Below, piece by piece: positions 7,221 to 60,915 of a stretch of 64,000 nucleotides of DNA. The notes under the pieces are model-generated. The model was given only the letters and a program-made list of their open reading frames with translations. It made no database searches and was not told the DNA's origin. The translations under genes were made by a program, and so were the position numbers. Source of the stretch: Leucoraja ocellata (taxonomy: Eukaryota); NCBI GenBank assembly GCA_036785375.1, contig JAWMAR010000203.1:3906001-3970000 (forward strand), read 5' to 3'. Every line of letters begins with the position of its first letter. The stretch's first letter is position 1.

Positions 7221-7588
7221 NNNNNNNNNNNNNNNNNNNNNNNNNNNNNNNNNNNNNNNNNNNNNNNNNNNNNNNNNNNNNNNNNNNNNNNNNNNNNNNN
7301 NNNNNNNNNNNNNNNNNNNNNNNNNNNNNNNNNNNNNNNNNNNNNNNNNNNNNNNNNNNNNNNNNNNNNNNNNNNNNNNNNNNNNNNNNNNNNNNNNNNN
7401 NNNNNNNNNNNNNNNNNNNNNNNNNNNNNNNNNNNNNNNNNNNNNNNNNNNNNNNNNNNNNNNNNNNNNNNNNNNNNNNNNNNNNNNNNNNNNNNNNNNN
7501 NNNNNNNNNNNNNNNNNNNNNNNNNNNNNNNNNNNNNNNNNNNNNNNNNNNNNNNNNNNNNNNNNNNNNNNNNNNNNNNNNNNNNNNN
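7221..7588. other. Assembly gap (N run), followed by a (CA)n-type microsatellite at 7589-7747
   Basis: Seen directly. Confidence 0.99.
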
Positions 7589-36345: not shown

Positions 36346-37224
36346 GACTTTGCAAAAGAAGACAAGCAGTTTTTACAGAAGCAGAAATCCTCCATTTTGT
36401 CAGGCACACAAAATGCCTGATATTATCAAAGCAACATCTCTGGAGGACATGGATGGGTGATGTTTTAGGGCAAGACCCATCTTCAGTGTGACCCTGCTCT
36501 AGATAGATACAAAGTGCTGGGGTAACTGAGCGGGTCTCTGGAACAACAAAAAGGTGATGTTTTGGGTCGGAACCCTTCTTCTGAAAGTAGAGATGTGGGC
36601 CTCATTGGTTTGGCAGCCAACATAATCAAAGACTTGCCCCACCCCGGCATTCCTTTTTCTCCCTGCTCCCCAGGCAGAAGGTACAGAAGCTTGAAAATGC
36701 ACACCAACAGATTCAGGAACAGCTTCTTCCCCTCCGTTATCGGGCTTCCGAACGGTCCTTTCATAAGCTAGGGTACTGTCCAATTCACCTCTATCCCATT
36801 GCGGACATTGGACTGATGCGCTACAATGCTGAGAACTATATTCTGCACTCTGTATCTTCCCCTTTGCTCTACCTCTTGTATTTGACTTCATTGTATTTAC
36901 TGGTGTATGTATAGTAATATCTGATTTGATTGGATAGCATGCAAAACAAAGCTTTTCACTGTACCTCACTACACACGGCAATAATAAAGCTAAACATTTG
37001 GAACTCTGAGAAGGCGATCAAGGCCGAGTCAGATCAATTGGTTTTGAGCTCAAGGAAAGTAATTGAATAGAGAATTAAGTTTCAGAAGCCGTGCTACAGC
37101 CTCTAGTTTCTGTTTCTTATATTCTACGTATATTGTTTGCGAGAAGAGTGTGTGGTTTTATGATAATTATCAGTTTGTGGTCTCGTTGAAGAGGGACAAT
37201 TTATTACTCTGGGTTATGGGCTCT

Positions 37225-37371
37225 TCATAAATTATTTTTATCTTTGACCTTTAAGACGGCATATTCTGTTTCTTGGGATTGCTCGGTCCATCTCAATTGC
37301 TGTCTTCGCTGTCCCTTGTTGAAATAAACAGGCGCATAATGCAGATTTTCATTGTTTATTGAAACATTATC
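37225..37371 (-). CDS. Exon 6, terminal cytoplasmic exon DNVSINNENLHYAPVYFNKGQRRQQLRWTEQSQETEYAVLKVKDKNNL*
   Basis: Strong acceptor ttgttatttttctgttacag|, phase 0. Contains LHYAPV (ITIM) and TEYAVL (ITSM-like). AATAAA at 37205-37200. Confidence 0.85.
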   Translation of the reverse strand, partial: DNVSINNENLHYAPVYFNKGQRRQQLRWTEQSQETEYAVLKVKDKNNL

Positions 37372-40300
37372 CTGTAACAGAAAAATAACAAGTAACAATA
37401 AGGCTCACTTGGAAACAGTTGTGTTACATTCATATCATAGAGTTATACAGCATGGAAACAGACCCATCGGCCCAACTGGTCTACGCCGACTAAGATGCCC
37501 CATCCAAGCATGTCCCATTTGCCCGTGGTTGGCTCTCGTCCCTGTAAACCTTTCCTGTCCATGCACCCGTCCATGCACCCGTCTATGCACCCGTCCACGC
37601 ACCCATCCACGCACCTGTCCAAATATATTTTAAATGGTGTTATATTCTCTGCCTCAACTACCTCCTCAGGTGGTTCGTTCCATATACCCACCACCCTCTG
37701 ATTGATAAAGTTGCCCCTCAGGTTTTTCCCTCTCACATTAAACATATGCCTTCTATTTCTCAACTAGACTAAGTGGCTATTCCTTGAAATTCCATTTCAA
37801 GCAGAGTGCAAGGCCACCAAATTCAAGTGCAGTTTAATACCTCTTCGAGCAGGGTGCAAGGCAACAAAATTCAAGTGCAGTTTCATACCACTTCAAACCA
37901 TATAACCATATAACAATTACAGCAGGGAAACAGGCCATCTCGGCCCTACAAGTCCGTGCCAAACAACTTTTTTTCCCTTAGTCCCACCTGCCTGCACTCA
38001 TACCATAACCCTCCATTCTCTTCTCATCCATATGCCTATCCAATTTATTTTTAAATGATACCAACGAACATGCCGCCACCACTTCCACTGGAAGCTCATT
38101 CCACACCGCTACCACTCTCTGAGTAAAGAAGTTCCCCCTCATGTTACCCTTAAACTTCTGTCCCTTAATTCTGAAGTCATGTCCTCTTGTTTGAATCTTC
38201 CCTATTCTCAAAGGGAAAAGCTTGTCCACATCAACTCTGTCTATCCCTCTCATTATTTTAAAGACCTCTATCAAGTCCCCCCTTAACCTTCTGCGCTCCA
38301 GAGAATAAAGACCTAACTTATTCAACCTATCTCTGTAACTTAGTTGTTGAAACCCAGGCAACATTCTAGTAAATCTCCTCTGTACTCTCTCTATTTTGTT
38401 GACATCCTTCCTATAATTGGGCGACCAAAATTGTACACCATACTCCAGATTTGGTCTCACCAATGCCTTGTACATTTTTAACATTACATCCCAGCTTCTA
38501 TATTCAATGCTCTGATTTATAAAGGCTAGCATACCAAAAGCTTTCTTTACCACCCTATCTATATGAGATTCCACCTTCAAGGAACTATGCACGGTTATTC
38601 CCAGATCCCTCTGTTCAACTGTATTCTTCAATTCCCTACCATTTACCATGTACGTCCTATTTTGATTTGTCCTGCCAAGGTGTCACATTTATCCGCATTA
38701 AACTCCATCTGCCATCTTTCAGCCCATTTTTCCAAACGGCCTAAATCACTCTGTAGACTTTGGAAATCCTCTTCATTATCCACAACACCCCCTATCTTGG
38801 TATCATCTGCATACTTACTAATCCAATTTACCACCCCTTCATCCAGATCATTGATGTACATGACAAACAACAAAGGACCCAACACAGATCCCTGAGGCAC
38901 CCCACTAGTCACCTGCCTCCAACCCGACAAACAGCCATCCACCATTACCCTCTGGCTTCTCCCATTCAGCCACTGTTGAATCCATCTTGCTATTCCTGCA
39001 TTTATACCCAACAGTTTAACCTTCTTAACCAACCTTGCATGAGGAACCTTGTCAAAGGCCTTACTAAAGTCCATATAGACAACATCCACTGCTTTACCCT
39101 CGTCAATTTCCCTAGTAACCTCTTCAAAAAATTCAAGAAGATTAGTCAAACATGACCTTCCAGGCACAAATCCATGTTGACTGTTCCTAATCAGACCCTG
39201 TTTATCCAGATGCTTATATATATTATTTCTAAGTATCTTTTCCATTAATTTGCCCATCAAGCAGGGTGCAAGGCCACCAAATACAGGTTCAGTTTCCTAC
39301 CACTTCAAGCAGGGTGCAAGGTCACCAATTTCAAATGTAGTTTCATACCATTTCATGCAGGGTGCAACGACACCATATTCAAATGCAGTTTCATACCATT
39401 TCAAAATCACAGCCGTAAGTGGTCGCGTTTTATCTAAAATCAATATAGTGCAAACAGGAAGTTGTCAAGTTTAGACAAGCAACCATTTGCAGGCAGTGCC
39501 TTTTGACTTCAACCCACCCCCCCCCAAAAACCCTCCATCCAGCAGAGGCAGGAGACAGAATGGCAAATTATTTAAAAACATTAATATCTCTCTGATATTT
39601 CATCGATGGGAAAAATCCTCCGACCCAGAAGGCGGACGGGGGCTCTGAGCGAGGTGGCCAAAAATGATGGCCGTAGGTGATGGCGGTCTCTCAGAAATAA
39701 CCATATAACCATATAACAATTACAGCACGGAAACAGGCCATCTCGGCCCTACAAGTCCATGCCGAACAAATTTTATTCCCCTTAGTCCCACCTGCCTGCA
39801 CTCGTACCATAACCCTCCATTCCCTTCTCATCCATATGCCTATCCAATTTATTTTTAAATGATACCAATGAACCTGCCTCCACCACTTCCACTGGGAGCT
39901 CATTCCACACCGCCACCACTCTCTGCGTAAAGAAGTTCCCCCTCATATTACCCCTAAACTTCTGTCCCTTAATTCTGAAGTCATGTCCTCTTGTTTGAAT
40001 CTTCCCTATTCTCAAAGGGAAAAGCTTGTCCACATCAACTCTGTCTATCCCTCTCATCATTTTAAAGACCTCTATCATGTCCCCCCTTAACCTTCTGCGC
40101 TCCAAAGAATAAAGCCCTAACTTGTTCAACCTTTCTCTGTAACTTAGTTGCTGAAACCCAGGCAACATTCTGGTAAATCTCCTCTGTACTCTCTCTATTT
40201 TGTTGACATCCTTCCTATAATTTGGCGACCAAAATTGTACACCATACTCCAGATTTGGCCTCACCAATGCCTTGTACAATTTTAACATTACATCCCAGCT

Positions 40301-43300
40301 TCTATACTCAATGCTCTGATTTATAAAGGCTAGCATACCAAAAGCTTTCTTTACCACCCTATCTATATGAGATTCCACCTTCAAGGAACTATGCACGGTT
40401 ATACCCAGATCCCTCTGTTCAACTGTATTCTTCAATTCCCTACCATTTACCATGTACGTCCTATTTTGATTTGTCCTGCCAAGGTGTAGCACCTCACATT
40501 TATCAGCATTAAACTCCATCTGCCATCTTTCAGCCCATTTTTCCAAATGGCCTAAATCACTATGTAGACTTTGGAAATCCTCTTCATTATCCACAACACC
40601 CCCTATCTTGGTATCATCTGCATACTTACTAATCCAATTTACCACACCTTCATCCAGATCATTGCTGTACATGACAAACAACAAAGGACCCAACACAGAT
40701 CCCTGAGGCACCCCACTAGTCACCTGCCTCCAACCCGATAAACAGCCATCCACCATTACCCTCTGGCTTCTCCCATTCAGCCACTGTTGAATCCATCTTG
40801 CTATTCCTGCATTTATACCCAACAGTTGAACCTTCTTAACCAACCTTCCATGAGGAACCTTGTCAAAGGCCTTACTAAAGTCCATATAGACAACATCCAC
40901 TGCTTTACCCTCGTCAATTTCCCTAGTAACCTCGTTACGGGGTCGGAGCTACAACCGGCGCCGCCCGCAGCCCCACCGGCCACAGCGCTGCGGAGCTTAC
41001 TGCACGGCGACCCGGTAAGGCATTGACCACTCCCCGCCACTCCGACCAGGTAGGGGACTAAGAATTAAAGTTTACCCCTTCACCCCCCCTTCACATAAAA
41101 GCCCTCCAAACTAACTGACTAACATTTCAGCAATGATTTACAGATGTTTAAGCGTCTCCCGGTCTCCGGGGAGGAGGCAGCCGCTACAGTAGTACAGACC
41201 TGCGTTGACCGTGGGTCGTTTCGGGTCAAGTTTGGCGCCAAACGCGAGCTTTGGTGCGCAAACAACATCTGGAAAAAATGGCCGGTTTTCGGAGTTTTTC
41301 GGTTTCCGGAACACCGGATAAAAGGTTGTGCACCTGTATTCCCGTTTCTAATGACATTTGAAATATTTCTGTCATAGCCCCGGCTATTTCTACACTAACT
41401 TCCCTCAATGTCCTAGGGAATATCCTGTCAGGACCTGGAGACTTATCCACTTTTATATTTTTCAAAAGTGTCAGTACTTCTTTTACTTTGAACCTCATAG
41501 TATCCATAGCTACTCTACTAGTTTCCCTTACCTCACATAATTCAATATCCTTCTCCTTGGTGAATACCGAAGAAAAAAAATTGTTCAATATCTCCCCCAT
41601 CTCTTTTGGCTCTGCAGATAGCTGTCCACTCTGTCTCTCCAATGGACCAATTTTATCCCTCGTTATCCTTTTGCTATTAATATAGCTGTAGAAACCCTTT
41701 GGATTGACTTTCACCTTACTTGCCAAAGCAACCTCATATCTTCTTTTAGCTTTTCTAATTTCTTTCTTAAGATTCTTTTTACATTCCTTATACTCCTCAA
41801 GCACCTCATTTACTTCATGCTGCCTATAATTATTGTAGATCTCCCTCTTTTTCCGAACAAGATGTCCAATTTCCCTTGAAAACCAGGGCTCTTTCCAATT
41901 TTTACTGTTTCCTTTCAACCGAACAGGAACATAAAGATTCTGTACTCTTAAAATTTCCCCTTTAAATGTCCTCCATTTCTCTTCTACATCTTTCCCATAA
42001 AACAAAATGTCCCAGTTCACTCCTTTTAAATCATCTCGCATCGCATCAAAGTTAGCCTTTCTCCAATCAAAAATCTCAACCCTAGGTCCAGTTCTGACCC
42101 TCTCCATAATTATCTTGAAACTAATGGTATTGTGATCACTGGACCCGAAGTGCTCCCCAACGCATACCTCCGCCACCTGTCCCATCTCATTTCCTAACAG
42201 GAGGTCCAGCACTGCCCCTCCTCTAGTAGGTACCTCTATGTATTGCTGCAAAAAACTATCCTGCACACATTTTACAAACTCCAACCCATCCAGCCCATTT
42301 ACAGAATGTGTTTCCCAGTCTATGTGTGGAAAGTTGAAATCTCCCACAATCACTACCTTGTGCTTACTACTAATCTCTGCTATCTCCTTACATATTTGCT
42401 CTTCCAGTTCTCGTTCCCCGTTTGGCGGTCTATAATACACCCCTATAAGTGTTGCTACACCTTTCCCACTTCTCAATTCCATCCAAATAGCCTCCCTAGA
42501 TGAGCCCTCCAATCTATCCTGCCAAAGCACTGCTGTAATATCTTCCCTGACTAGCAATGCAACACCTCCACCTCTTGCCCCTCCAATTCTATCACACCTG
42601 AAGCAGCAAAATCCTGGAATATTTAGTTTCCAATCACAGCCCTCCTGCAACCACGTTTCACTGATCGCCACAACATCATACTTCCAGGTGTCTATCCAGA
42701 CTCTAAGCTCATCCACCTTTCTTACAATGCTCCTAGCATTAAAATATGCACATTTAAGAAAACCCCCGTCCCTTATTCTCTGTTTATTTCCTTTTTTTTC
42801 TTTCTCCTCTTGTGTCCGAGTGCTTCCCATTTCTGCTTCCTGCCTCCCATTCGGTCTACTACCTTTCGCTATTTGAGTCCCTCGCCCCAACCATTCTAGT
42901 TTAAAGTCTCCCCAGCTGCCTTTGCAAATTTCCCCGCTAGGATATTGGTCCCCCTCGGGTTCAAGTGCAACCCATCCTTTCTGTACAGGTCCCACCTTCC
43001 CCAAAAGAAGTCCCAATGATCCAGGAACTTGAATCCCTGCCCTCTGCACCAGTCTTTCAGCCACGCATTTATCCTCCACCTCGCTCCATTCCTACTCTCA
43101 CTGTCGCGTGGCACAGGCAGTAATCCTGAGATTGTTACCTTTTTGGTCCTTTTTCTTAACTCTCCTCCCAACTCCCTAAATCCTCCCTTCAGGACCTCTT
43201 CCCTTTTTTTTCCTATGTCATTGGTACCTATATGTACCACGACCTCAGGCTCCTCTCCCTCTGATTTAAGGATATCTTGGATGCGTTGAGACACGTCCGA

Positions 43301-46300: not shown

Positions 46301-49300
46301 TCACTGCGCCAACGTGCCGCAGAATGGCTTGTGTTCTTAGTCCATTACATCCAATAGTGCTGGTGAATTTGTTCATATAAGCTGACAATACCTCAGTGTA
46401 CATTAGAACATCGTGCATGCAACATAAGGGTAAATATCAAACTAAATTACTCACCTCATTTACTGAGTTTTTTTGTTTTCTCATGCTTTGAATATCAACA
46501 GTTGCGTCATGGACAGATGATTCTATAAAAATATCATGAAGATTTAGTGTACTTCAGAGGTACAGGACAGAAACAGGCCATTCAGCCCACTGAGTCTATG
46601 CCGCCCATCGATCACGCTAGTTCTATGTTATCCCACTTTCTCATCCACTCCCTACACACTAGGGGCAATTTACAGAGGCCAATTAACCTACAAACCCAAA
46701 CATGAGAGGAAACCGGAGCATTCTGAAAAAACCCATGAGGTCACAGGGAGAACGTGCAAACTCCACATGGACAGCACCCAGTCAGGATTGAACCCGCTGT
46801 GAGGCAACAGCTCTACAAGCTGCAACACTGTGTCGCCCTAATTTTGTTTAGATTATTTTAATCTCACCGGGAACTAAATACAATATTCACTTTACATGCT
46901 CAGTTGTTAGTTAAATTACAAAATAAGATGTACAATGTATACATTACCTTTTCCTTTCTTCAATTTACTGTGGTAATTATACACAATCCAGATGCATATT
47001 GGCACTATTAGGATCAGACTCAGTAGAATGAAATAATACTCGGAGGATCCTTGAAAATCACAATTGAAATATGAATCAAAACTATGCTCCAATGAATAGC
47101 AAATATAATCATGACTAATGCATGTTACGTTAATATAAATGCACTGTTACATAAAACATTAAACATGTATTTAGTTTAGTTTCAGTTTGTTTAAAGAAAC
47201 AGAATAGAACCTGGTGCTTCTGCCCACCGAGTCCACACTGGCCATCGCTCACCTGCTCACACCAATTCTATGTTATCACACTTTCCCACCCAACGGAAAT
47301 GATGCCGAAAAGCCAAATAACCAAATGGACGCAACGCCAAAAAGCCAACTAATCGAACGGACGCAACGCCGAAAAGCCGAATAACCAAAACGGCGGGACA
47401 CTAAAAACCAAATAACCGAAAGGGCGCATTGCTGAAAAGCCAACTCACTGAACGCCAAAAAATAATGGGCGGGACTTGTCAGCGATTGGTCCAGACCCCC
47501 GCGTCCATCACATCACTGGCTGGGGGAGACGGGAGAGTGGGGATCATTTTCCTCACATAAGATCGCCTGGAGCTAGGGGGTGACTGGGCGTTTGGAACAT
47601 GAGCACCAAGGTGTAAGCAGCCGAAGGAGCGCATCCCTCGGGACAGACCCCACTCCCCCCCCCCCCCCCGGATCTCCCCCGTGCAGCCACATTGTGACAG
47701 GCTGTGGGTCGGCAGCGCACACACACACGGGCCCGGGTGAAACGGGACCGTGGACACACGGGGAGAAAAACTTGGCAACGTCCCCGGCCCGTCAGCTGCA
47801 GCAGAGTTGGGGACAGTCTGGTCCCTCTGCCCACCCAGAGTCACTGACCACGATGCCCCGCCACCAGACCTCGACCCCCAGACCAGGGCGATTCACCCCA
47901 CACCGAACAATTTTATCTCCTCCCACTACCCCCCTCCCCCTTTCCCTTGACACCAAGAAGCACATTTTATTTATTGTTTAAACACAGTAATACCATCTGG
48001 TTGCCTGCGTAACGCACACAACAAGCTCCCACGCATAAAACATCAGATTATTTTCAGTTTATTTGCAGTTCATTTGTGTTTTTGAACTTTGCACATTTAA
48101 CAGCCATTTTTACAGCGGTGTTGAGTACATCGTACTTTTCTTCCCCCCCGCAGATGATACATTACTCTCGAATCACATACCTCACCTCTATTGCCCCTCT
48201 ACATAAATGAGCGCATTAGAAGATCATCTGAGCATCTTGAAATCAATCTCATGAGGGTGAAAGTGTTCATCTCATGAGGGTGAATAAGTTGCAATTTCCA
48301 TTTCATTCTTTTCCACTGTGTGTGATGTGGGCAGATCGATACCGCATCGCTCGGCTATCTTTCACTCGTGCTCATGAGATTGATTTCAAGATGCTCAGAT
48401 GATCTTCTAATGCAGTCATTGTTCCTAGTGCCAATCCCTTCAGCTATACCTGCAACTGAAGCTATGGGTGGATTAGTAGACCTTGAAGGGGCATTGTCAT
48501 TTTATTTTTATGTAGAGGGGTAATAGAGGTAAGTTATGTGTTGTGAGAGTAATGTATCATCTGCGGGGGTGAAAAAGTATCATCTGCGGGGGGGGGGGGG
48601 GGGGGGGGGGGTGTGGGAGGAGATAAAATTGTTCATTGTCATGCACACTTGTCATCGGCCCGCCAGGGAATTTGTGTCCCCCCCCACCATGTTTTAAAAG
48701 CGATTTACTTTGACTGCCAGTGAATCACCCGGTGTGGGTGTCGGTGGTGTGAATTACCCCAAGTGTGTGTCGGGGTCCGGGGAGGGTGAACCACCCTGGT
48801 GTGGGTGTCGGGGTCCGCTGGTGGTGCATTGCGGTCAGTGAATCTGGGTGGGTGGAGGGACCAGACTGTCCCCAACTCTGCGGGGGGGAGGGTGGGGGCC
48901 GTCCTGAGAGATGCGCTCCTTCGCCCCCTTACACCTTGGTGCTCGGGTTCACAATGCCCAGTGACCCTCCAGCCCCGGTGTGGGAAAATGACCCCCACCT
49001 TCCCGTCTCCTCCGGCCAGTGATGTAATGGACAAGTCCTGCCCCCCGTCGACATCATGTTCGTTATTTGGCTTTTGTTCGGTTATTTGGCTTTTCGGCGT
49101 TGCGTCCGTTTGGTTATTTGGCTTAATATTCTAGTTCTACAAATATCTATCCTTAAAGAAATGAGACAGGCCTTTCAGAGGAGAAAACCTACATTATTCT
49201 ATTCATAGATTAACATTCTTACTATTCACTAAGTTTACTGTTACTGGGGTAAAGATTGGTTCCTTGTGTTGTAAATGACCGCAAGATAACGTGTTGTAAA

Positions 49301-52300: not shown

Positions 52301-55300
52301 TGTTTTTTGCTTATTCTATGGTTCTTATAATTCCAAATAAAACTTGTCACTATAGAGTCAACTTTTTAAAATAAATATTTTGGGAGATTTATAGGAATTG
52401 ATTGTAAAAGCAATTGCGGAAGGAAAATCATTTTTATAGCATTAAATCTACCGAGCATTGAAATGAGAAGTGTTTTCCAATAGTGAATATTATTATGCAA
52501 TTTATTAAGTAAAGGCATGAAATTTGATTTAAATAAAGAAGTATATTTCATGGTCACATAAATTCCTAGGTATTTACATTTTTGTTTGACTATTCTGAAA
52601 GGTGATTGTTGCAATATGTATAACTTGGCATAATCTTACTTTTATTCCAATTAATTCTATATCCCGAAAATAAACCAAATTGAGTTACAAGATTTAACAA
52701 GTTTGGAATGCTGATTTCTGGGTTTGCAATATATAGTAATACATCGTCTGCATATAGAGAGATTTTATTAACTGTGTTTTTAGTATTATACCCATATATT
52801 ACTGGATGTGCTCGAACACTTTCTGCTAGTGGTTCAATATCAAGGGCGAATAATAATGGAGATAACGGGCATCCTTGTCTGAAACCTTTAGATAAATATA
52901 ATTTTGTTGATAACATTTGATTTGTCATTATGCTAGCTGTTGGGTTAGTGTATAAAAGCTTAACCCATGTGCAAAACGTCTCACCCAGTTGAAATGTTTC
53001 CATCACCGAGAATAAATAGGGCCATTCCTCCAATTTCCATTTAACCTCACTTTGACAATGGAGGAGGCCTAGAACAGAAAGGTTAGAGTGGGAATGAGAA
53101 GGAGAATTAAATGTGTTTAGCAACTGGGAGATCAGGTAGGGCCAGGCAGACTGTGAGAAGGTGTTCAGCGAAATGATGGCCCAGTCTACATTTGGTCTCG
53201 CCGATATATAAGAGTCCACATCTTGAACAACGGATACAGTAGGTGAGGTTGGAGGAGATGCAAGTGAATCTCTGCCTAACCTGAAAGGACTACCGGGATC
53301 CCGGGACGGAGTCGAGGGAGATGGTATAGGGACAGGTGTTGCATCTCTTGTGGTTGCAGGGGAATTTTTTCCAGGGTGATATTCCTGGGGGAAAAGTGGC
53401 AATAATTTCAAAAGTAAATAAACATCATAAGATGGACACAAATTGCTGTAGTAACTCAGCGGTTCAGTCAGCATCTCTAAAGAAAAGAAATACTGTAGGT
53501 GACGTTTCGGGTCGCAACCCTTTTTCAGACAGATAGATAGATAGAGAATGTAGGAACGAAATGCAGATGCTGGTTTATACCAAAGATAGACCAATGAAAA
53601 CAAGTAAACTACTCTAAAGTAGAACATATAACAATACAGGAACAGGTCCTTCAGCCCACAATGTCCATGAAGATATGATGCCAAGTTAAACTAATCTCTG
53701 TTTGCATATCATCCATATCCCTCCATTCCCTGCAATTCCATGTGCCTATCAAAACCTCTAACCTCTAACACCACAAAATCGCATCTGCATCCCCCACCAC
53801 CCCTGGCAGCATGATCCAGCTCACACCACCCTCAATAAAAACTTTAAATGCTCCTAAGATCATGAGGATTTGTGAAGAGAAAATCAGATTCATCGTTTCA
53901 GGTCAAAACCTGTCAGAACTATTTTTAACTTTTTTGTTTTAATTTAGTTTAGTTTATTGTTACATGGACTGAGATGCAGCAAAAAGCTTTTGTTTTCTCA
54001 TCAAAATACACAATTTTGCTTTTTCCCCCCACATTATGCTAGACTTCACATCTATTTTCTTGTTCATATATTCTATCCACAATCAACATTCCTATCTGTC
54101 TTTGTATAATTCGAAAATTCAGCAACATCACAACGCTGCCTTCATAGGAGTCGTGTACATTACAATATTTCATAATATAATATTCAGTCTGAAGAAGGGT
54201 CCTGACCCGAAACATCACCTATCCATGTTCTCCAGAGATGCTGCCTGACCCAGCAATTTGTGCCCTTTTCCCACCGTTCCACCATATTCCACTGTCCTTG
54301 TAAGGAAACCAAGTTGATTTAACAGCAACACTATAACCGGTGGGGCACCGGGAGTGAAATTGAAGTGGTAATAATTAAGTATTGTGTATAGTTTATGGAG
54401 ATACAAGGAACTGCAGATGCTGGAATCTTGAGCAAAACACAACGTGTTGGAGCCACTCAGCGGGTCAGGCAGCATCTGTGGAGGGAATGGACAGACGATG
54501 TTTGGATCGGGAATGTTCGTCAGTCTGAAACGTCGTCTGTTCATCCCCTCCACAGATGCTGCTTGACCCGCTGCATTTGTTTATAGTTTATATATTTACC
54601 TAAACCCTTTTTGTCGAGATCCCATCTGTGCGTCGATGAACGCAGAATAAATTAAATTAATTAAACAATATGAAATTTGCAGACACAAGGAACCGCAGAT
54701 GCCGGAATCTTGAGCAAAACTCAAAGTGCTGGGGGAACTCAGTGGGTCAGGCAGCATCTGTGAGCTGAAGGGTCCCGAACCGAAACGACTCATGTCCATT
54801 CCCTCCACAGATGCTGAGTTCCTCCAGCACTTTGTGTGTTGCTCAAGATTCCAGCATCTGCAGTTTCTCGAGTATCATTTTTATACATCTTTCTTCAACT
54901 TTCATTATTATTTGAGACATTTACCGTTAAAATACAGGGTACAAGATGTATATAATAATGTCATCATTTTAAAATGATGAGAGGGATAGACAGAGTTGAT
55001 GTGGATCAGCTTTTCCCTTTGAGAATAGGGAAGATTCAAACAAGAGGACATGACTTCAGAATTAAGGGACAGAAGTTTAGGGGTAACATGAGGGGGAACT
55101 TCTTTACTCAGAGAGTGGTAGCGGTGTGGAATGAACTTCCAGTGGAAGTGGTGGAGGCAGGTTCATTGGTATCATTTAATAATAAATTGGATAGGCATAT
55201 GGATGAGAAGGGAATGGAGGGTTATGGTATGAGTGCAGGCAGGTGGGACTAAGGGAAAAAAGTTGTTCGGCACGGATTTGTAGGGCCGAGATGGCCTGTT

Positions 55301-55401
55301 TCCGTGCTGTAATTGTTATATGGTTATATGGTTAATATATTGATATGATAAAGCACTTACGCCGTATTGTAACGGTAAATGTTTCAAATAATAATGAAGA
55401 A

Positions 55402-55443
<42 letters not shown>

Positions 55444-58400
55444 AGCTGATATCATCGATGCATAAACATACATATATATAATATATAAGGCAGCAACTCA
55501 AATATGTATATATATATATATATATCGATGCACAGATGAACTGTACTTGAGTTGCTGCCTTACAGCGCAGTAGACGCGGGTTCAATCCTGACTACGGGTG
55601 TTGGATGTGCGGAGTCTGTACGTTCTCGTGACCTTCGTGGGTTTTTTTCCGGGTGCTCCGGTTTCCTCCCACACTCCAAAGACGTACAAGTTTGTAGGTT
55701 AATTGGCTTCAGCAAAATTGTAAATTGTCCCCAATGTGCAGGATAGTGTTAGTGTATGATGTGTTTAAGAAGAAGCGTCTCGACCCGAAACGTCGCATAT
55801 CCTTCTCTACATAGATGCTGCCTCACCCGCTGAGTTCCTCCAGCGTGTGTTTGTCTAGCCAGTTTATGAGGTGATCGCTGATCGGCCGAAATGCCCTTTT
55901 CCGCGTATCTCTAAAGTCTGAAAGTCTAAAAGCATATCTGCAGTTGATATTGTACACATTGAGTGATCTTATACACTTTTGATCAGGTTTATGAATTACG
56001 TTCAACGTTCTCCAGAGATGCTACTACACGCTAGTTACTTCAACACTTTGTGTCTTTTTTGTAATCTAGAATCTGCAGTTCATTGTGGCTACGTTTAACA
56101 AATGTGTACACATGTACTATTAAACCTTGCAACCTTGGACATGTGTAGGAAGGACCTGCAGATGCTAGTTTACAGCGCAGATAGACACAAAATGTTGGAG
56201 TAACTCGGCAGTAACTGAGCCGCTGAGTTACTCTAGCACTCTGTGTATCTTCAGTAATTGGAGGACGTTAGCTGCCACGTTCATTCAAGCCACTTACTTG
56301 GGATAGGATGGAAACGTTCGCTCACCGAGCCCGTCCCCGTGAGGTGCTGAACCAGGCAGGTGACGACCATGCCCGCCTCTAGCCGAGGGCCGGTGAGCCG
56401 CAGCCGGGAGCTCACGTTGAAGCTTCCATCCTCATTCTCCCTCAGCGGCCCCGCTTCTGTTTCATAGGACAACTGGCCCACGACAGCCCAGGACATGTTC
56501 AGCTCCCTCGGGAAGAATCCGGCGGCCACACAAGTCAGGCTCCGCGTCTCTGCGCCTTTTACCCCGGTCTCCAGGGTCAGGGAGATGTCAGGCTTCGCTG
56601 CGTAAAGTAGGAAAATAACACGCTGTGAATCTTCCTGTCGCGCTCAGTCATGCATGAAGCAACTATGATAACACGGCACGCCGTGCACCTGCTTAAGGAG
56701 CAACCAAGTTATTCAATGGATTATTAGCGGAATAAAGAAGAGCTGCAAACGCTGGTTTATACCGAAGAAAGGCACAAGTACTGGCGTAACTCAAATGGTC
56801 AGTCGGCATCTCTGGAGAACATGGATAGCTGACGAGACACAAAGTGCTGGAGTAACTCTTCATGGAAGATATGTGATAACCATATAACCATATAACAATT
56901 ACAGCACGGAAACAGGCCATCTCGACCCTTCTAGTCCGTGCCGAACACATAATCTCCCCTAGTCCCATATACCTGCGCTCAGACCATAACCCTCCATTCC
57001 CTTCCCATCCATATGTTTCGGGTCTGGTTACATCTACAGACTACATCTCTTCAGTCTGTGTCTCAAAATGCACAATAAGAGAGAAAAATACAGGAAGCGA
57101 ATGGAATGGAAGTGGAGACACAAGGGATTGGAGATGCTGGAATTTTTAAGAATAATGAGTAAGCCATTTAGAATGGAGATGAGGGAAAACATTTCTCCCA
57201 GAGAGTTGTGAATCTGCGGAATTCTCTGCCTCAGAAGGCAGTGGGGGCCAAGTCTCTGGATGCTTTTAAGAGAGTTATAGAGCTCTTAAAGATAGCGGAG
57301 TCCATGGATATGGGGAGAAGGCAGGAACGGGATACTGACTGTGGATGTTCAGCCATGATCACAGTGAATCTGCGGGGGGAATGGACAGGCGGCGTTTCCG
57401 GTCGGGACCATTCTTCGGTCTGAATCGCCGCCTGTCCATTCATTCCACAGATGCTGCCGGACCCGCCGAGTTCCTCCAGCACTTTGGGTATTTTAATGCA
57501 TGAAATGGAAGTGAATATGTAGACGGTAAACTAAATCCAAGCAGATGATGGACATCTAAAACAGAACATATAAATATTCAGCCGGACAGGCCTGATTCGT
57601 GGGAAGAGAATAACGGTCCATGTTCTCCAGAGATGCTGCCTGACTCGATGAGTTACTCCAGCACTTTGCGTCTTTGTTTTTAAACCAGCCCCTGCAGTTC
57701 CTTGTGTCTCAGGGTCAGGGTTTCGACTGGAAGCCTTCAATGTGAATCGGTAAATTATCCCCCCCCCCCCCCACACCACACACACACGCACACAGATACG
57801 GGCCGACCCGATGAGTAGCTCCAGCATTTTCAGTTACATCTGGCACTGCCCTGGCCCAGATTGGTCAGAAGATGGATTCACGTTGCCAGAATTATTTAAC
57901 AGAGTCTGGTCGGGTCGGGCTCCCTCTCGCCAGCCCGTGGGCGATGGGAGAGCGGCCGCACGTTTGCATTGTAGCTGCCTCCCTTCAATGAAGCGTTGGG
58001 AATATCCCCACTGTCCGCTGATACAGTGGGCTGGGGACCTCACACACGTCCCAAGTTCCCCAACACCAAACCTCCACGAATGCTGCCTTAACCGCCGAGT
58101 TCCCCGTTACTTTGTGTTTTGCTTAAGACTCCAGCTCCTGCAGTTCCCCGTCTCCACTTCTATTTATTTACCTTCCTGCATTTTATCTTTCTCTATTAAT
58201 GTGCACGTTGAGGCACAAACCAACCCAGGCTGACGAAGGGCCCTGACCCTAAACGTCTCCTCTCCATGATCTCCAGAGATGCTGCCTGACCCGCTGTTAC
58301 TCCATCACTTTGAGTCTGCCCTCTCTCACTGCTGCTCTCCTGGATCTTACGCTTATATTTAGTTATGTTCATTTTCACACATATACATGATGCATCTGCC

Positions 58401-60792
58401 GCACATTTGGTTATCGCAGCCGGGAATTGTTTCAAGGCCCAGTTATTCTACTTCCCTGGAGCCAAGAAGCAAATGTTAAACCGAACTTGACAAAGACAAG
58501 AATCCTTCAGCCGGTCAGGTCGAGGGAATCTAGAAACAACTGAGAGAAACAAAGAGGCTTTTAGAAACATAGAAATTAGGTGCAGGAGTAGGCCATTCGG
58601 CCCTTCGAGCCTGCACCGCCATTCAATATGATCATGGCTGATCATCCAACTCAGTATCCCGTACCTGCCCTCTCCATACCCTCTGATCCCTTTAGCCACA
58701 AGGGCCACATCTAACTCCCTCTTAAATATAGCCAATGAACTGGCCTCGACTACATTCTGTGGCAGAGAATTCCAGAGATTCACCACTCTCTGTGTGAAAA
58801 AAGTTCTCCTCATCTCAGTTTTAAAGGATATCCCCCTTATCCTTAAGCTGTGACCCCTTGTCCTGGACTTCCCCAACATCGGGAACAATCTTCCTGCATC
58901 TAGCCTGTCCAACCCCTTAAGAATTTTGTAAGTTTCTATAAGATCCCCTCTCAATCTTCTAAATTCTAGAGAGTATAAACCGAGTCTATCCAGTCTTCGT
59001 GGACCTTTTGTCAGACTGGGCTGGTTTGTGCCGGAAAATGAGCATTAATAGAGAGAGATGAAATGCAGGAATGAAATGGAAGTAGAGACATGGAACTGCA
59101 GGCGCTGCAGTCTTAAGCAAAACACAAACTGCTGGAGGAACTCAGCGGTTAAGGCCGCATCTGTGGAGAGAATGGACAGGTGGCGTTTCGGGTTGGGGAA
59201 CTTGGGATTCGTGCGATTCACCAACTCCATCGCATCAGATCTCGGGGTGGCTGTGGAGGCAGATTCGATCGTAGAGTTTAAGAGACTTTTGGATAGACAC
59301 ATGTTTGTTTAACTTGGCCTCATGGGCCGCACGAACATTGTGGGCTGAAGGGCCTGTTCCTGTTGTATGTTCTATATTAATTACCTTGGATATGTAATGT
59401 GGTTCCGTTTCCTATAATCGTTTTCCAGGGGGATGTATCACGAATCAGTACCACACAATGGTAAATGTCTGCATCGTGCACAGTCACCTCCCGAATGACC
59501 AGCGAGCCCACGGACACGAACAGTCGGTCGCCTGTCTTCAGAAAACTCTTGGTCTTGTTGTCCCAGAGCTCCGGGTTGTCTTTCGTCCGAAACCAGTATT
59601 GCCTCATTGAAACTACCTCCCCCTCTCCAGGTAGCAGGGAGCAGGTGAACGTAGCTGTCTGTCCTCGGAGAAGTGCAAGAGAAGCAGGAGACTGGTTCAC
59701 CCTCACACCGACAGCGGACCCTGGCACGGAAAGTGAACATAGTTAGCGACGTCTTCCGACTAACTCGAGTTTACTATCATGGGCACAAGGACAGCGAGGT
59801 CCATGCACAATTAACCCCCCCCCCTCCCCCCCCTCCTCTCCTCTCTCACCTGTAACCACTTGTGTAGGAAGGAACTGCAGATGCTGATCTATATCGAAGA
59901 CAGACACAAAGTGCTGGAGACGCTAGTAGAATCTCTGGAGAACATATCTGAAGAAAGGTCGCGACGCGAAACGTCATCTGTCCATGTTCTCCAGAGATGC
60001 TGCCTGACCCGCTGAGTTACTCCAGTACTGTGTTTTGTTCAAGATTCCAGCATCTGCATTTCCTTGTGTCTCTTACATTTATTTGCGTTAACGTCCTCAT
60101 GTAAACTTACATTAACTGCATTCCCAGCATCTACAGTTCCTTGTGTCGCTTATGTTTAAGATAGACACAAGGTACAGGAGTAACTCAGCGGGTCAGGCAG
60201 CATCTCTGGAGATAAATGACGAGTGACGCTTCGAGTCGGAACCCCTCGCTTAAATTTAGTCTTGTTAAGTTTCTGACATAGAAACATAGAAAATAGGTGC
60301 AGAAGGAGGCCATTCGGCCCTTCGAGCCAGCACCGCCATTCATTGTGATCATGGCTGATCGTCCCCAATCAATAACCCGTGCCTGCCTTCTCCCCATGTT
60401 GGTCTCCACTGTCCTCTGTGGCAGGGAATTCCACAAATTCACAACTCTCTGGTTGAAAAAGCTGTTTCTCACCTTAGTCTGTAATGGTCTCCCCTTCATT
60501 CTTATTGTAACTACATTTTCAATTTCTGCTTTTGTGTCTAAATTAAAAATTTGCTTGCAACAGCATCAAATGCACTTACACAGAAACAAACACATATTCA
60601 AAAACAAATTGAACGTAAATCACTCATGACATTTTCAAAAGACGGCAAAAAAGCAAAAAACATCAATGCAAAAGCCATAGAAAGAAACAAGTTATAGGAA
60701 GACAACGTGAACAGGTTGGCAAGGGTGAACATGAATGACTTACCTGGGAGAAAGAGGCAGAGAGTGGAGATGAATTGTGTAAACGATGACAT
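37225..60792 (-). CDS. Six-exon type I membrane IgSF receptor (leader-VJ-C1-TM-cytoplasmic ITIM/ITSM), 333 aa, SIRP-like inhibitory receptor
   Basis: Exons of 49+336+300+102+68+147 nt = 1002 nt. All junctions are GT-AG with compatible phases (1,1,1,1,0), and the spliced frame is open from ATG 60792 to TGA 37225. Joining these exons into one transcript is inferred. Confidence 0.85.
37897..39255 (-). mobile_element. Young CR1 LINE, 5'-truncated (RT C-terminal half)
   Basis: QHGF..GRSCLTNL, DFSKAFDKV, GVPQGSVLGP, KYADDTK; one frameshift; (GGTTATAT)n tail. Confidence 0.95.
39698..43557 (-). mobile_element. Near-full-length CR1 LINE: ORF1 SGNH esterase, ORF2 APE endonuclease and RT, interrupted at 40934-41336
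   Basis: ORF1 IGDSIVRG..HIGTND..DGLHLN; ORF2 NARSI..ISETW..GDFN..SDH; RT ORF at 39782-40900. Confidence 0.95.
40934..41336. mobile_element. One-ended Tigger/pogo-like DNA element fragment inside CR1 ORF2
   Basis: On the minus strand TA|CAGGTGCACAACCTTTTATCCGG is followed by CCGAAAA repeats. The other TIR and part of CR1 ORF2 are deleted. Confidence 0.6.
46455..46522 (-). CDS. Exon 5, cytoplasmic (E)SSVHDATVDIQSMRKQKNSVNE
   Basis: Acceptor tttttatag|, donor GAG|GTGAGT, phase 1 to 0, open frame. Confidence 0.8.
46948..47049 (-). CDS. Exon 4, transmembrane (R)SSEYYFILLSLILIVPICIWIVYNYHSKLKKGK
   Basis: Acceptor gattttcaag|, uncharged hydrophobic helix followed by a basic stop-transfer segment, donor G|GTAATG, phase 1-1. 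Confidence 0.85.
47291..49123. mobile_element. Foldback element of the same family as 17402-22036, arms almost abutting
   Basis: 47291-48283 matches the 17460-18430 arm; 48285-49123 is its inverted counterpart. Confidence 0.8.
50384..53350 (-). mobile_element. Penelope-like element 3' part (GIY-YIG endonuclease plus hammerhead-bearing terminal repeat), split by an L1
   Basis: The minus strand of 53040-53290 reads FTCISSNLTYCIRCSRCGLLYIGETK...EH. It continues after the L1 at 50784 into the ctgaagaag...gaaac repeat. Confidence 0.85.
50785..53024 (-). mobile_element. L1-clade LINE, 5'-truncated and frameshifted
   Basis: RQGCPLSPLLF, LYADD, KYLGI, Cys-rich end and poly(A); perfect 14-bp TSD ttcctccaatttcc (50771-50784, 53025-53038). 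Confidence 0.93.
54186..54220 (+). ncRNA. Minimal type I hammerhead ribozyme-like motif in a Penelope-derived repeat (representative copy)
   Basis: CTGAAGA-a-GGGTC.ct.GACCC-GAAA-caTC: conserved core boxes and stem II are present; stem I is weak. Confidence 0.6.
54900..55399. repeat. ~36-bp inverted repeat pair (MITE-like) with a CR1 3' fragment (~54960-55335) inserted between the arms
   Basis: ttcattattatttgagacatttaccgttaaaatac versus the reverse complement of gtattgtaacggtaaatgtttcaaataataatgaa. Confidence 0.6.
56298..56597 (-). CDS. Exon 3, IgC1 domain
   Basis: AKPDISL...LTCVAAGFFPRELNMSW...ENEDGSFNVSSRLRL...VTCLVQH shows the C1-set signatures. Acceptor ttttcctactttacgcag|, donor A|GTAAGT. 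Confidence 0.93.
58560..58997 (-). mobile_element. CR1 3' fragment of a second subfamily (TTTCTATG tail); related copies at 15790-16045, 24870-25056 and 60277-60500
   Basis: RGDLIETYKI...TRGHSL...FFTQRVVNLWNSLP. Confidence 0.9.
59385..59720 (-). CDS. Exon 2, IgV domain with germline-joined J-like segment
   Basis: VNQSP...ATFTC...YWFR...LVIREVTVHDADIYHC...IIGNGTTLHIQ. CTAAC branch point plus ccag acceptor; G|GTAATT donor. Confidence 0.93.
60744..60792 (-). CDS. Exon 1, signal peptide MSSFTQFISTLCLFLP(G)
   Basis: ccaaaATGTC start, hydrophobic core, phase-1 donor CCAG|GTAAGT; continues as G-SAVG in the V exon, like an Ig leader. Confidence 0.85.
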
Positions 60793-60794
60793 TT

Positions 60795-60915
60795 TGGTGA
60801 AGGAAGTGCCGAGACACGGATTACACGGAGCCGCTGGTCATTCTGCAGAATTCACAACCGCTGCCAGTTTTTCTGCGCTGCTGTGCGTCAGATCGACCGC
60901 AGATTGGCCGGTAGT
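60795..60915 (-). promoter_or_regulatory. Candidate proximal promoter of the IgSF gene
   Basis: Non-repeat, CpG-containing segment upstream of the ATG with an ETS-type GGAAGT (~60802), a RUNX-like AACCGC (~60856) and a CCAAT box (60903-60907 on the minus strand). Confidence 0.4.

What the first reader, a model, noticed from the sequence alone, without database searches (positions are those of the whole stretch)
37225..60792. Hidden non-rearranging VJ-C1 receptor with an ITIM plus ITSM-like tail
Seen: six exons spread over 23.6 kb of repeats splice in frame with canonical sites into leader-V-C1-TM-tail. The TM and both cytoplasmic exons are absent from the ORF track. The V exon already contains a J-like G-x-G-T strand (IIGNGTTLHI), and I saw no RSS beside it. 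Known: C1-set domains are largely restricted to Ig, TCR, MHC, tapasin and SIRP-type proteins, and mammalian SIRPs are V-C1-C1. Inference: this is a one-V/one-C1 chain shaped like a TCR or light chain but wired to a PD-1/SIRPalpha-type inhibitory tail. In a cartilaginous fish it is a candidate relative of the pre-RAG antigen-receptor ancestor, or an undescribed checkpoint receptor.
Basis: partly seen in the sequence, partly recalled or inferred. Interest (0 to 1): 0.9.

Follow-up and report, generated by a model that had tools for sequence, protein, structure and literature searches.

The report
Ray/shark SIRP-like inhibitory receptor gene
This is a real six-exon gene for a cell-surface receptor with one antibody-like variable domain, one constant domain and an inhibitory tail, the cartilaginous-fish counterpart of the SIRP "don't-eat-me" receptors; it is already predicted in other sharks and rays but has not been studied.

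Summary
On the minus strand, six exons with GT-AG sites and matching phases (60792..37225) encode a 333-aa protein. It has a split leader, a germline-joined VJ-type V-set domain, one C1-set domain, an uncharged TM and a tail with LHYAPV (ITIM) and TEYAVL (ITSM-like).

It is not a hidden novelty. Every exon, including the TM exon and the 68-nt exon 5, matches predicted proteins of 13 elasmobranch species. NCBI names these inconsistently: SIRP-alpha/beta-1-like, Ig kappa-like, TCR-beta-like. The gene groups with batoid copies.

The family aligns end to end with a caecilian "SHPS-1-like" protein, with four tail tyrosines in register. Among the four PDB chains whose per-stretch scores I saw, the family profile's best contiguous V-C1 match is human SIRP-alpha d1-d2. 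Batoids also carry an Arg-TM activating twin. The V domain alone, however, looks more like VL, TCR or VNAR than SIRP d1, so orthology to mammalian SIRPA is unproven.

In this window two frameshifts removed the distal tail, leaving two tyrosine motifs. Expression is not shown: one related-species RNA run gave about 0 depth. I found no paper on elasmobranch SIRPs. One review calls SIRP origins unknown, and a 2026 survey dates the family to tetrapods.

Verdict: new member of a known kind, moderate interest.

The parts
60744..60792 (-). Exon 1: start codon and most of the signal peptide (split leader), phase-1 donor
   Evidence: Sequence; splice check. MSSFTQFISTLCLFLP resembles the Hypanus N-terminus ..WLFLPAPAVG (sequence seen, compared by eye).
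59385..59720 (-). Exon 2: end of leader plus a V-set domain that already contains the J-like G strand (GNGTTLHIQ); no RSS
   Evidence: Pfam V-set 1.7e-7. 63% identical to Pristis P0050 (69/109). No heptamer in 59001-60000. AlphaFold model pLDDT 87.7, with V-type neighbours.
56298..56597 (-). Exon 3: one C1-set domain (GFFP in the BC loop, 13 residues between Cys and Trp, CLVQH)
   Evidence: Pfam C1-set 5.3e-13. Hallmarks as listed in PMC2785349. Model pLDDT 85.8, with neighbours among MHC II, B7-H6, Ig C and beta-2-microglobulin. 58% identical to Pristis.
46948..47049 (-). Exon 4: stalk, uncharged transmembrane helix (YYFILLSLILIVPICIWIV) and basic stop-transfer stretch
   Evidence: Hydrophobicity scan; sequence. 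tblastn with P0050 gave 60% identity, E 2e-8.
46455..46522 (-). Exon 5: 68-nt cytoplasmic exon (ESSVHDATVDIQSMRKQKNSVNE), phase 1 in and phase 0 out
   Evidence: Best splice score of all candidates; sequence. 58% identical to Pristis EPSVHDKNVDNQITRKRIKDSVNK, E 0.001.
37225..37371 (-). Exon 6: tail with ITIM LHYAPV and ITSM-like TEYAVL, then TGA; AATAAA at 37205
   Evidence: Sequence. tblastn gave 58-60% identity to P0050, P0052 and P0005, E 1e-11 to 2e-14. PolyA signal found.
37127..37250 (-). Out-of-frame remnants of the ancestral distal tail, now downstream of the stop (YEEP.. in frame +1; CPSSTRPQTDNYHKTTHSSRKQYT in frame +2)
   Evidence: tblastn of relatives' tails: P0005 to 37250-37215; P0052 and P0054 to 37198-37127 at 50-52% identity.

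Best explanation
The region holds one intact gene for a type-I membrane receptor of the SIRP type. It has a signal peptide, a germline-joined VJ-type V domain that presumably binds the ligand, one C1-set domain, an uncharged transmembrane helix and a cytoplasmic tail with an ITIM and an ITSM-like motif.

It is the copy, in a batoid-like lineage, of a gene conserved across sharks and rays.

Inferred mechanism, by analogy with SIRP-alpha and other ITIM receptors: ligand engagement leads to Src-family phosphorylation of the two tyrosines. These dock the SH2 domains of SHP-1/SHP-2-type phosphatases and damp activation of the cell that carries the receptor, probably a myeloid cell. In batoids the inhibitory form is paired with a twin that has an arginine in the membrane span and a short tail, the usual design of an activating partner.

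Shown here: exon structure, domain types, motifs, conservation in 13 species, and collinearity with a tetrapod SIRP-like protein.

Inferred: expression, ligand, phosphatase recruitment, cell type, and true orthology to mammalian SIRPA.
For: Exons, phases and GT-AG sites. Pfam V-set and C1-set.

A V-domain search of 1.84 billion representatives found 49 proteins at E<=0.001. The best single-stretch hits were elasmobranch proteins (P0002 Pristis 63%, P0003 Hypanus 54%, P0005 Scyliorhinus 50%, P0006 Narcine 50%), named SIRP-beta-1-like or SHPS-1-like by NCBI.

Searches with P0005 and with the family profile returned 15 and 17 proteins, all elasmobranch. These map onto the V, C1, TM, exon 5 and exon 6 exons of the window.

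The C1 tree puts the window inside the batoid clade with 100/100 support.

hhalign of the family against caecilian SHPS-1-like P0032 gave probability 99.8 over 337 columns, with the four tail tyrosines in register. BLASTP gave 29% identity over 329 aa, E 2e-25.

Family profile against PDB: per-stretch scores were printed only for the four top-ranked chains. Among them the best contiguous stretch is human SIRP-alpha d1-d2, 66.9 bits over profile 21-218, sharing G.GT.L...AKP at the V/C1 border, F.PRD in the BC loop and CEV.HVT. UrIg2 scored 56.8 and Ig about 46.

Arg-TM short-tail twins occur in Pristis, Hemitrygon and Mobula.
Against: The V domain alone does not look like SIRP d1. With the window V, none of the best 60 of 85 PDB matches is a SIRP. 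With a V-only family profile, none of the best 60 of 998 is a SIRP; VL, TCR alpha/delta, VNAR and CD8-beta lead. Foldseek gives the same picture.

The C1 domain alone is about equidistant from Ig CH, UrIg2 and SIRP.

The caecilian protein used as a bridge itself hits light chains and UrIg2 as well as SIRP-alpha, and its name is automatic.

Per-stretch scores of ordinary light chains and TCR chains against the family profile were not seen, so SIRP-alpha is not shown to be the best contiguous match overall.

There is only one C1 domain and two tyrosine motifs, against two C1 domains in mammalian SIRPs.

There is no expression evidence. The RNA run X23, from a related species of unknown tissue with about 6% of the run read, gave depth 0-0.3 on the bins that lie wholly or mostly within the leader, V and C1 exons, and the differences table records one read on V and one on C1.

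The tail is truncated by two frameshifts. Differences from close relatives' DNA are mostly nonsynonymous (7 of 9 in V, 8 of 9 in C1), which fits either positive selection or relaxed constraint.

Synteny could not be tested.
Confidence: 0.7

Rival explanations
1. It is a separate, old lineage of non-rearranging VJ-C1 receptors that is not orthologous to tetrapod SIRPs. It would stand beside UrIg and UrIg2 as a relic close to the pre-RAG antigen-receptor gene, having gained an ITIM tail independently.
For: V-only searches rank VL, TCR alpha/delta, VNAR and NKp30-type V domains above any SIRP d1. The window C1's top PDB entry by summed score is UrIg2. No non-elasmobranch protein passed the two word-seeded family searches. 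A 2026 survey dates the SIRP family to Tetrapoda (PMC13262535, table passage seen).
Against: It is collinear from V to the fourth tail tyrosine with a tetrapod SHPS-1-like protein. Among the four chains whose per-stretch scores were seen, the best contiguous V-C1 match of the family profile is SIRP-alpha, not UrIg2 or Ig. The paired inhibitory/activating design is as in SIRP-alpha/beta. UrIg has three C domains and is secreted; UrIg2 has nine or more (PMC12227049, section 7 and passages read). The word-seeded searches are blind to distant relatives.
Confidence: 0.18
2. In this species the gene is decaying into a unitary pseudogene. The tail has already lost its end, substitutions are mostly amino-acid changing, and it is not transcribed.
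For: Two frameshifts occur after KVKDKNNL, and the distal tail survives only out of frame. There are 7 nonsynonymous to 2 synonymous differences in V and 8 to 1 in C1 against relatives' contigs. The terminal branch is long: 0.47 and 0.57 against medians of 0.11 and 0.13. RNA depth is about zero.
Against: All 333 codons over six exons are open, with all ten splice dinucleotides canonical. Both domain cysteines, the Trp, the C1 hallmarks and both tyrosine motifs are kept. The lost part had already lost its tyrosines in other batoids (Pristis, Hypanus, Mobula birostris keep only two motifs). The RNA run is from another species, of unknown tissue, and only about 6% of it was read.
Confidence: 0.1
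3. There are two unrelated genes: a secreted leader-V-C1 gene, plus chance or foreign TM/ITIM exons downstream.
For: There are 9.2-kb and 9.1-kb repeat-filled introns, and no read evidence for the C1-TM or exon 5-6 joints (could not span them).
Against: Relatives' single proteins contain V, C1, TM, exon 5 and the tail in the same order. Each piece matches the window at 58-63% identity for Pristis. All phases fit.
Confidence: 0.02

Closest known systems
SIRP-alpha (SHPS-1, PTPNS1) and the SIRP paired-receptor family of tetrapods
   Same: N-terminal V domain with a J-like G strand in one exon, followed by C1-set domain(s), a single TM and tyrosine-based inhibitory motifs. An activating twin with a basic TM residue exists in relatives. 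Shared border and loop motifs with human SIRP-alpha d1-d2 appear in the profile alignment. It is collinear with a caecilian SHPS-1-like protein through four tail tyrosines.
   Different: It has one C1 domain instead of two; I recall that chicken SIRP is also V-C1, but did not check this. The window copy has only two tyrosine motifs. V-domain sequence and fold rank antigen-receptor V domains above SIRP d1. The ligand is unknown, and synteny was not tested.
Predicted elasmobranch proteins such as XP_051870356.1 (Pristis pectinata, 'signal-regulatory protein beta-1-like X1') and XP_038658211.1 (Scyliorhinus canicula, 'SHPS-1-like')
   Same: Same exon-by-exon architecture. Identity to Pristis is 63% in V and 58% in C1. 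The C1 tree follows the shark/batoid split. These are orthologues or near-orthologues.
   Different: Shark copies keep four tail tyrosine motifs. Batoid copies keep two but retain the distal tail in frame. The window copy ends right after the second motif. Hypanus and Mobula birostris have a duplicated C1.
UrIg and UrIg2 (non-rearranging VJ-C1 genes of elasmobranchs; PMC12227049)
   Same: Non-rearranging VJ exon with a split leader, followed by C1-type domains, in the same animals. UrIg2 is the top PDB entry for the C1 exon by summed score.
   Different: UrIg has three C domains and is secreted. UrIg2 has nine to eleven C domains. Word searches of that paper for ITIM, ITSM and 'inhibitory' found nothing. 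The best single UrIg2 stretch scores below SIRP-alpha against the family profile.
Rearranging antigen-receptor chains (Ig light chain, TCR alpha/delta, IgNAR V)
   Same: One V plus one C1 layout. The V-domain sequence and predicted fold are closest to these.
   Different: V and J are in one exon with no RSS. There is an ITIM tail instead of a short tail with charged-TM assembly. It is one gene, not a cluster.
NKp30 (NCR3), NITR, PD-1
   Same: VJ-type or V domains on signalling receptors. NKp30 appears among both sequence and fold matches. The ITIM-then-ITSM order resembles what I recall for PD-1.
   Different: From recall, not tested here: NKp30 and PD-1 have no C1 domain, and NITRs are teleost genes with a V and an I-type domain.

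Membership tests
SIRP family | Membrane-distal V-set domain of VJ type encoded by one exon | tested here: met
   Pfam V-set. GNGTTLHIQ lies inside the V exon and no RSS heptamer is nearby. SIRP is listed among joined-VJ IgSF in PMC11599192 (passage).
SIRP family | Membrane-proximal domains are C1-set | tested here: met
   Pfam C1-set 5.3e-13. GFFP, 13 residues between Cys and Trp, and C-L-V-Q-H match the hallmarks given in PMC2785349. Fold neighbours are C1 domains.
SIRP family | Three extracellular domains, V-C1-C1 (mammalian definition, PMC12975943 passage) | tested here: not met
   Only one C1 exon lies in the window; a tblastn and motif scan of all 64 kb found no second one. Most relatives also have one, while Hypanus and Mobula birostris have two.
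SIRP family | Alpha-type member: uncharged TM and cytoplasmic tyrosine motifs that recruit SHP-1/2 | tested here: inconclusive
   The TM has no charged residue. LHYAPV and TEYAVL are present. Sharks have four motifs, and the window and other batoids have two. Phosphatase binding is not testable here.
SIRP family | Paired activating member with a basic residue in the TM | tested here: inconclusive
   Present in relatives (P0051, P0064, P0065, each with Arg in the TM and a short tail). None lies in this window; the rest of the genome was not searched.
SIRP family | Sequence closer to SIRPs than to other V-C1 proteins | tested here: inconclusive
   Family profile: SIRP-alpha d1-d2 has the best contiguous stretch among the four chains with printed per-stretch scores (66.9 bits against UrIg2 56.8). 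V-only profile: no SIRP in the best 60 of 998. The C1 domain alone is about equidistant.
SIRP family | Orthology by synteny with the tetrapod SIRP cluster; CD47 binding | not testable with these tools
No binding assay is possible.
UrIg / UrIg2 | VJ domain followed by three (UrIg) or nine or more (UrIg2) C1-type domains; secreted, or TM without inhibitory motifs | tested here: not met
   There is one C1 exon and an ITIM tail. Architecture taken from PMC12227049, section 7 and the introduction passage.
Rearranging Ig/TCR genes | Separate V and J segments flanked by RSS | tested here: not met
   The J-like strand is within the V exon, which splices directly to C1. No heptamer occurs in 59001-60000.
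ITIM / ITSM motifs | ITIM (S/I/V/L)xYxx(I/V/L); ITSM TxYxx(V/I) (consensus recalled) | tested here: met
   LHYAPV fits the ITIM consensus. TEYAVL has the ITSM Thr at -2 but Leu at +3, so it is ITSM-like only. Both motifs are conserved across the family.

The most novel reading that the evidence does not exclude
The elasmobranch single-C1 family is the true early form of SIRP. This would move the origin of the SIRP checkpoint from tetrapods back to the first jawed vertebrates. Its V domain would still look like an antigen-receptor V because it sits close to the non-rearranging VJ-C1 gene from which Ig/TCR arose. It would then be a third such relic beside UrIg and UrIg2, but wired as a membrane-bound inhibitory/activating pair, as the 'myeloid primitive receptor' idea of Hatherley et al. 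2009 proposed.
Probability: 0.2. Interest if true: 0.75.

Novelty: new member of a known kind. Interest (0 to 1): 0.45.

Why it matters
SIRP-alpha is a major innate checkpoint. [quoted passage not shown] A 2026 survey of IgSF families places SIRP at Tetrapoda (PMC13262535, table passage read).

A gene conserved across sharks and rays, with the full V-C1-TM-tyrosine-motif layout and an activating twin, would make that question directly testable in the oldest jawed vertebrates. It also bears on the debate, revived by UrIg and UrIg2, about which non-rearranging VJ-C1 genes resemble the target of the RAG transposon.

For this window alone the yield is smaller. It is one more orthologue, with a lineage-specific shortened tail.

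Tried and rejected
The V exon alone in the word-seeded protein search gave nothing: 5 candidates, none scored. That tool sees only proteins of 62-196 aa for this query.

The ESM Atlas returned only generic V-set and C1-set clusters, one of them 'SHPS1 phosphatase (fragment)' for C1.

I looked for a second V or C1 exon, or an alternative charged TM exon, in the 64 kb. None was found. A 'DTGNYRC' hit at 27370 (+) lies in repeat-derived sequence with stops and was dropped.

The multi-domain top hits of the representative search (P0001, P0004, P0007 and others) are generic Ig-repeat proteins or merged models without J-like or C1 hallmarks. They were set aside.

Fold searches confirmed V-type and C1-type folds but could not separate SIRP from Ig, TCR or MHC.

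The caecilian bridge protein is itself ambiguous against PDB.

Read laying: I chose 56200-60850 (leader, V, C1) because it holds the most exon sequence. It showed no usable RNA coverage and only repeat-driven joints. The C1-TM and exon 5-6 joints, and the frameshift site near 37225, were therefore not checked by reads.

A proper phylogeny against curated SIRP, IgL, TCR, UrIg, NKp30 and NITR sets was not possible.

Dornburg & Yoder 2022 and Flajnik et al. 2023 are not held and may bear on this. Supplementary files were not opened.

The joined (spliced) protein model was never assembled or searched. All searches, folds and alignments of the window used single exons.


Full report
WHAT IS THERE. 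The finding lies on the minus strand. Reading the sequence and checking each boundary by script gives six exons.

- Leader: 60792..60744, 49 nt.
- V: 59720..59385, 336 nt.
- C1: 56597..56298, 300 nt.
- TM: 47049..46948, 102 nt.
- Cytoplasmic exon 5: 46522..46455, 68 nt.
- Last exon: 37371..37225, 147 nt including TGA.

Every intron starts with GT and ends with AG. The phases run 1,1,1,1,0, and the sum is 1002 nt, or 333 codons plus stop. The introns are 1021, 2787, 9248, 425 and 9083 nt long.

Among all phase-compatible AG...GT intervals between the TM exon and the last exon, it had by far the best splice score. It is 58% identical to the matching piece of the Pristis protein.

The introns are largely repeats. 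A LINE with a GDSL-type ORF1, an APE endonuclease and a reverse transcriptase lies on the same strand at 37978-43666, and there are further RT pieces at 52593-53684. Apart from repeats, I found no other gene in the 64 kb.

DOMAINS. The V exon scores as Pfam V-set (1.7e-7) and the next exon as C1-set (5.3e-13).

The V exon carries the two cysteines, the Trp (YWFR), DADIYHC, and the J-like strand GNGTTLHIQ before its phase-1 donor. No RSS heptamer lies within 59001-60000.

The C1 exon shows the three C1 hallmarks listed by Hatherley et al. 2009 (PMC2785349, passages read). These are an aromatic-aromatic-Pro at the BC loop (GFFP), exactly 13 residues between the B-strand Cys and the C-strand Trp, and x-V-x-H after the F-strand Cys (CLVQH).

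I folded each exon on its own with a family alignment. The V model has mean pLDDT 87.7 (only two of the five models were confident). Its neighbours are shark VNAR, TCR V-alpha, VL and NKp30. The C1 model has mean pLDDT 85.8. Its neighbours are the B7-H6 C domain, MHC class II alpha-2/beta-2, Ig constant domains and beta-2-microglobulin.

The TM segment, YYFILLSLILIVPICIWIV, has no charged residue. The last exon encodes ..NENLHYAPVYF..(24 residues between the tyrosines)..QETEYAVLKVKDKNNL-stop. LHYAPV fits the ITIM consensus. TEYAVL has the Thr of an ITSM but Leu at +3, so 'ITSM-like' is the right word. Both consensus patterns are recalled.

RELATIVES. The V exon was searched against 1.84 billion representatives. 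It found 49 proteins at E<=0.001 and 7 at E<=1e-10.

The best single-domain matches are Pristis pectinata (63%), Hypanus sabinus (54%), Scyliorhinus canicula (50%) and Narcine bancroftii (50%). NCBI names them 'signal-regulatory protein beta-1-like', 'tyrosine-protein phosphatase non-receptor type substrate 1-like' or 'uncharacterized'.

Searching with the catshark protein, and then with an 8-sequence family profile, returned 15 and 17 proteins, all from elasmobranchs. Across that makes 13 species. The automatic names are inconsistent and also include 'immunoglobulin kappa light chain-like', 'Ig heavy chain Mem5-like' and 'T cell receptor beta chain-like'. Those two searches are seeded by shared words and limited by length, so their silence about other vertebrates means little.

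All these proteins map back onto the window's V, C1, TM and last exons, and with a short-query search onto exon 5.

In trees of each domain, the C1 exon falls inside a batoid clade with 100/100 support. The V exon falls outside the well-supported shark clade but is otherwise unresolved. The window has a long terminal branch, 0.47 and 0.57 against medians of 0.11 and 0.13. So the window probably comes from a ray or skate lineage without a close annotated relative in the set. The gene tree looks like a species tree, so these are orthologues.

THE TAIL. Shark copies carry four tyrosine motifs: LHYA.V, TEYA.L, V.YS.V and T.YASL. Full-length batoid copies (Pristis, Hypanus, Mobula birostris) keep only the first two, although the distal tail is still in frame.

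In the window the protein stops right after the second motif. The homologous distal sequence is still recognisable downstream, but in the two other frames: 37250-37215 with YEEP, and 37198-37127 with CPSS...NYHKTTHSSRKQ. Two frameshifts therefore separate it from the ancestral frame.

Because the lost part had already lost its tyrosines in batoids, I read this as a shortened but working tail rather than as gene death. I could not check the site with reads.

IS IT A SIRP? Evidence for:

- The family aligns with a caecilian protein that NCBI calls SHPS-1-like (P0032) from the V domain through C1 and TM to the end. All four tail tyrosines are in register (hhalign probability 99.8, 337 columns; BLASTP 29% over 329 aa, E 2e-25).
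- I ran the family profile against PDB sequences. Per-stretch scores were printed only for the four top-ranked chains. Among these, the best single contiguous stretch is human SIRP-alpha d1-d2 (66.9 bits, profile 21-218). It shares the G.GT.L...AKP border between V and C1, F.PRD in the BC loop and CEV.HVT. UrIg2 scores 56.8 and Ig chains about 46. Higher total scores of heavy chains come from their several C domains.
- Pristis, Hemitrygon and Mobula hypostoma have a twin with the same ectodomain, an Arg in the TM and a short tail. This is the alpha/beta design of SIRPs.

Evidence against, or neutral:

- The window V alone, and a V-only family profile, rank VL, TCR alpha/delta, VNAR, CD8-beta and NKp30 first. 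No SIRP is among the best 60 shown (of 85 and of 998 matches). Foldseek agrees.
- The C1 alone is about equally far from Ig CH, UrIg2 and SIRP.
- The caecilian bridge protein is itself ambiguous against PDB.
- I did not see per-stretch scores of ordinary light chains or TCR chains against the family profile.
- Mammalian SIRPs have two C1 domains.
- Synteny could not be tested.

My reading is that it works like SIRP-alpha, is most probably a SIRP-family member in the broad sense, and that one-to-one orthology to mammalian SIRPA is open.

EXPRESSION AND VARIATION. No indexed run on record as RNA holds the stretch.

I laid 56200-60850 on one raw RNA run of a related organism (X23, polyA, about 6% of it read) and on contigs of three other runs. 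RNA depth on the bins lying wholly or mostly within the leader, V and C1 exons was 0 to 0.3, and the differences table records one read on V and one on C1. All other depth and all listed joints came from repeats. This is no evidence of silence: it is another species, the tissue is unknown and only a small sample was read. But expression remains unshown.

The DNA contigs show that the window is close to, but not identical with, two sampled organisms. X17 has 11 differences in 439 nt over the V exon. X20 is about 94% identical.

Of the 9 X17 differences inside the V exon, 7 change the amino acid. Three of these lie together in the loop just before GNGT. Of the 9 listed X20 differences in the C1 exon, 8 change the amino acid, and X20 also has an in-frame 6-nt deletion at 56330. 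Only the best-supported differences were listed (317 more were not shown), so these are not full counts. The pattern fits either diversifying selection on an immune receptor or relaxed constraint. I cannot tell which.

HOW IT LIKELY WORKS. Shown: a signal peptide, an outward-facing VJ-type V domain on a C1 stalk, a plain TM, and two conserved tyrosine motifs 25 positions apart (28 in relatives).

Inferred from what is established for SIRP-alpha and ITIM receptors (PMC12975943, passages read): ligand binding by the V domain, tyrosine phosphorylation, docking of SHP-1/SHP-2, and inhibition of the carrying cell. In batoids this would be balanced by the Arg-TM twin signalling through an adaptor. 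The ligand, the cell type and the phosphatase binding are untested.

KNOWN OR NEW. SIRP is a recognised member of the joined-VJ IgSF set (PMC11599192, passage). Its V-C1 layout has long been read as a link to the antigen-receptor precursor (PMC2785349, passages).

UrIg and UrIg2, the recently described non-rearranging VJ-C1 genes of elasmobranchs, differ in having three or nine and more C domains. Word searches of that paper for ITIM, ITSM, SIRP and 'inhibitory' found nothing (PMC12227049: section 7 read, word searches, further passages).

The full-text searches that were answered found no paper describing SIRP-like genes in sharks or rays. A 2022 review says SIRP origins remain unknown and lists mammals, Gallus and Anolis (PMC9652883, passage). 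A 2026 survey table places the SIRP family at Tetrapoda (PMC13262535, passage).

Two possibly relevant papers, Dornburg & Yoder 2022 and Flajnik et al. 2023, are not held. Supplements were closed.

The family is thus present in databases under automatic names but, as far as I could see, uncharacterised. This window adds one more orthologue, with a shortened tail.

EARLIER NOTES OF THE SCAN. A note on the same tail motifs (s1-885324) agrees with what I see. Two notes on other pieces of this genome report a UrIg-type gene (s1-884603) and a leader-V-C1 gene read as secreted (s1-886530). I did not test them. The second could be worth checking as the possible Arg-TM twin or a soluble form.

VERDICT. 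It is a real, apparently intact SIRP-type inhibitory receptor gene of an elasmobranch: a new member of a known kind. Interest is moderate, because the family as a whole, not this copy, could settle where SIRPs began.

Noticed in passing
window 37127-37250 (-): After the stop codon, the ancestral distal tail survives out of frame in two pieces (YEEP.. and CPSS..NYHKTTHSSRKQ). Two frameshifts therefore shortened the tail in this lineage.
   Followed up: partly
proteins P0051 (Pristis), P0064 (Hemitrygon), P0065 (Mobula hypostoma): Batoids have a twin gene product with the same V-C1 ectodomain, an arginine inside the TM and a short tail. This is an activating-type partner, as with SIRP-beta. None is in this window.
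   Followed up: partly
window 59385-59720 and 56298-56597, against runs X17 and X20: Differences from relatives' DNA contigs are mostly amino-acid changing (7 of 9 in V, 8 of 9 in C1). Three lie clustered in the loop before GNGT. X20 has an in-frame 6-nt deletion at 56330.
   Followed up: partly
window 37978-43666 (-): A LINE with a GDSL-esterase ORF1, an APE endonuclease and an RT lies on the gene's own strand inside the last intron. Part of its RT region is present twice (38643-39260 and 39782-40900).
   Followed up: partly
window 46948-47049 (-) and family alignment A1: The TM helix is unusually well conserved across sharks and rays (YYF.LLSLI.IVP.C.WII, with Pro and Cys). This hints at a conserved partner within the membrane.
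   Followed up: no
window 59395-59410 (-) and alignments A1, A4: Most batoid copies (four of the five seen; Hypanus has GSGT), like the window, have an N-glycosylation sequon inside the J-like motif (GNGT). The orectolobiform sharks Stegostoma and Hemiscyllium also have GNGT; the other four shark copies in A1 have GEGT or GEET.
   Followed up: no
NCBI names of the family: The same orthologous gene is auto-named SIRP-alpha-like, SIRP-beta-1-like, Ig kappa light chain-like, Ig heavy chain Mem5-like, TCR beta chain-like or uncharacterized in different species.
   Followed up: yes
window 7221-7588: An N stretch of 368 bases is followed by sequence whose ORF translations (H/T/P on one strand, C/V/G on the other) point to a CA/GT-type simple repeat. 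It was left untouched.
   Followed up: no
other pieces of the same genome (notes s1-884603, s1-886530): Earlier first-stage notes report a UrIg-type VJ plus three-C1 gene and a leader-V-C1 gene read as secreted. The genome may therefore hold several non-rearranging VJ-C1 genes.
   Followed up: no
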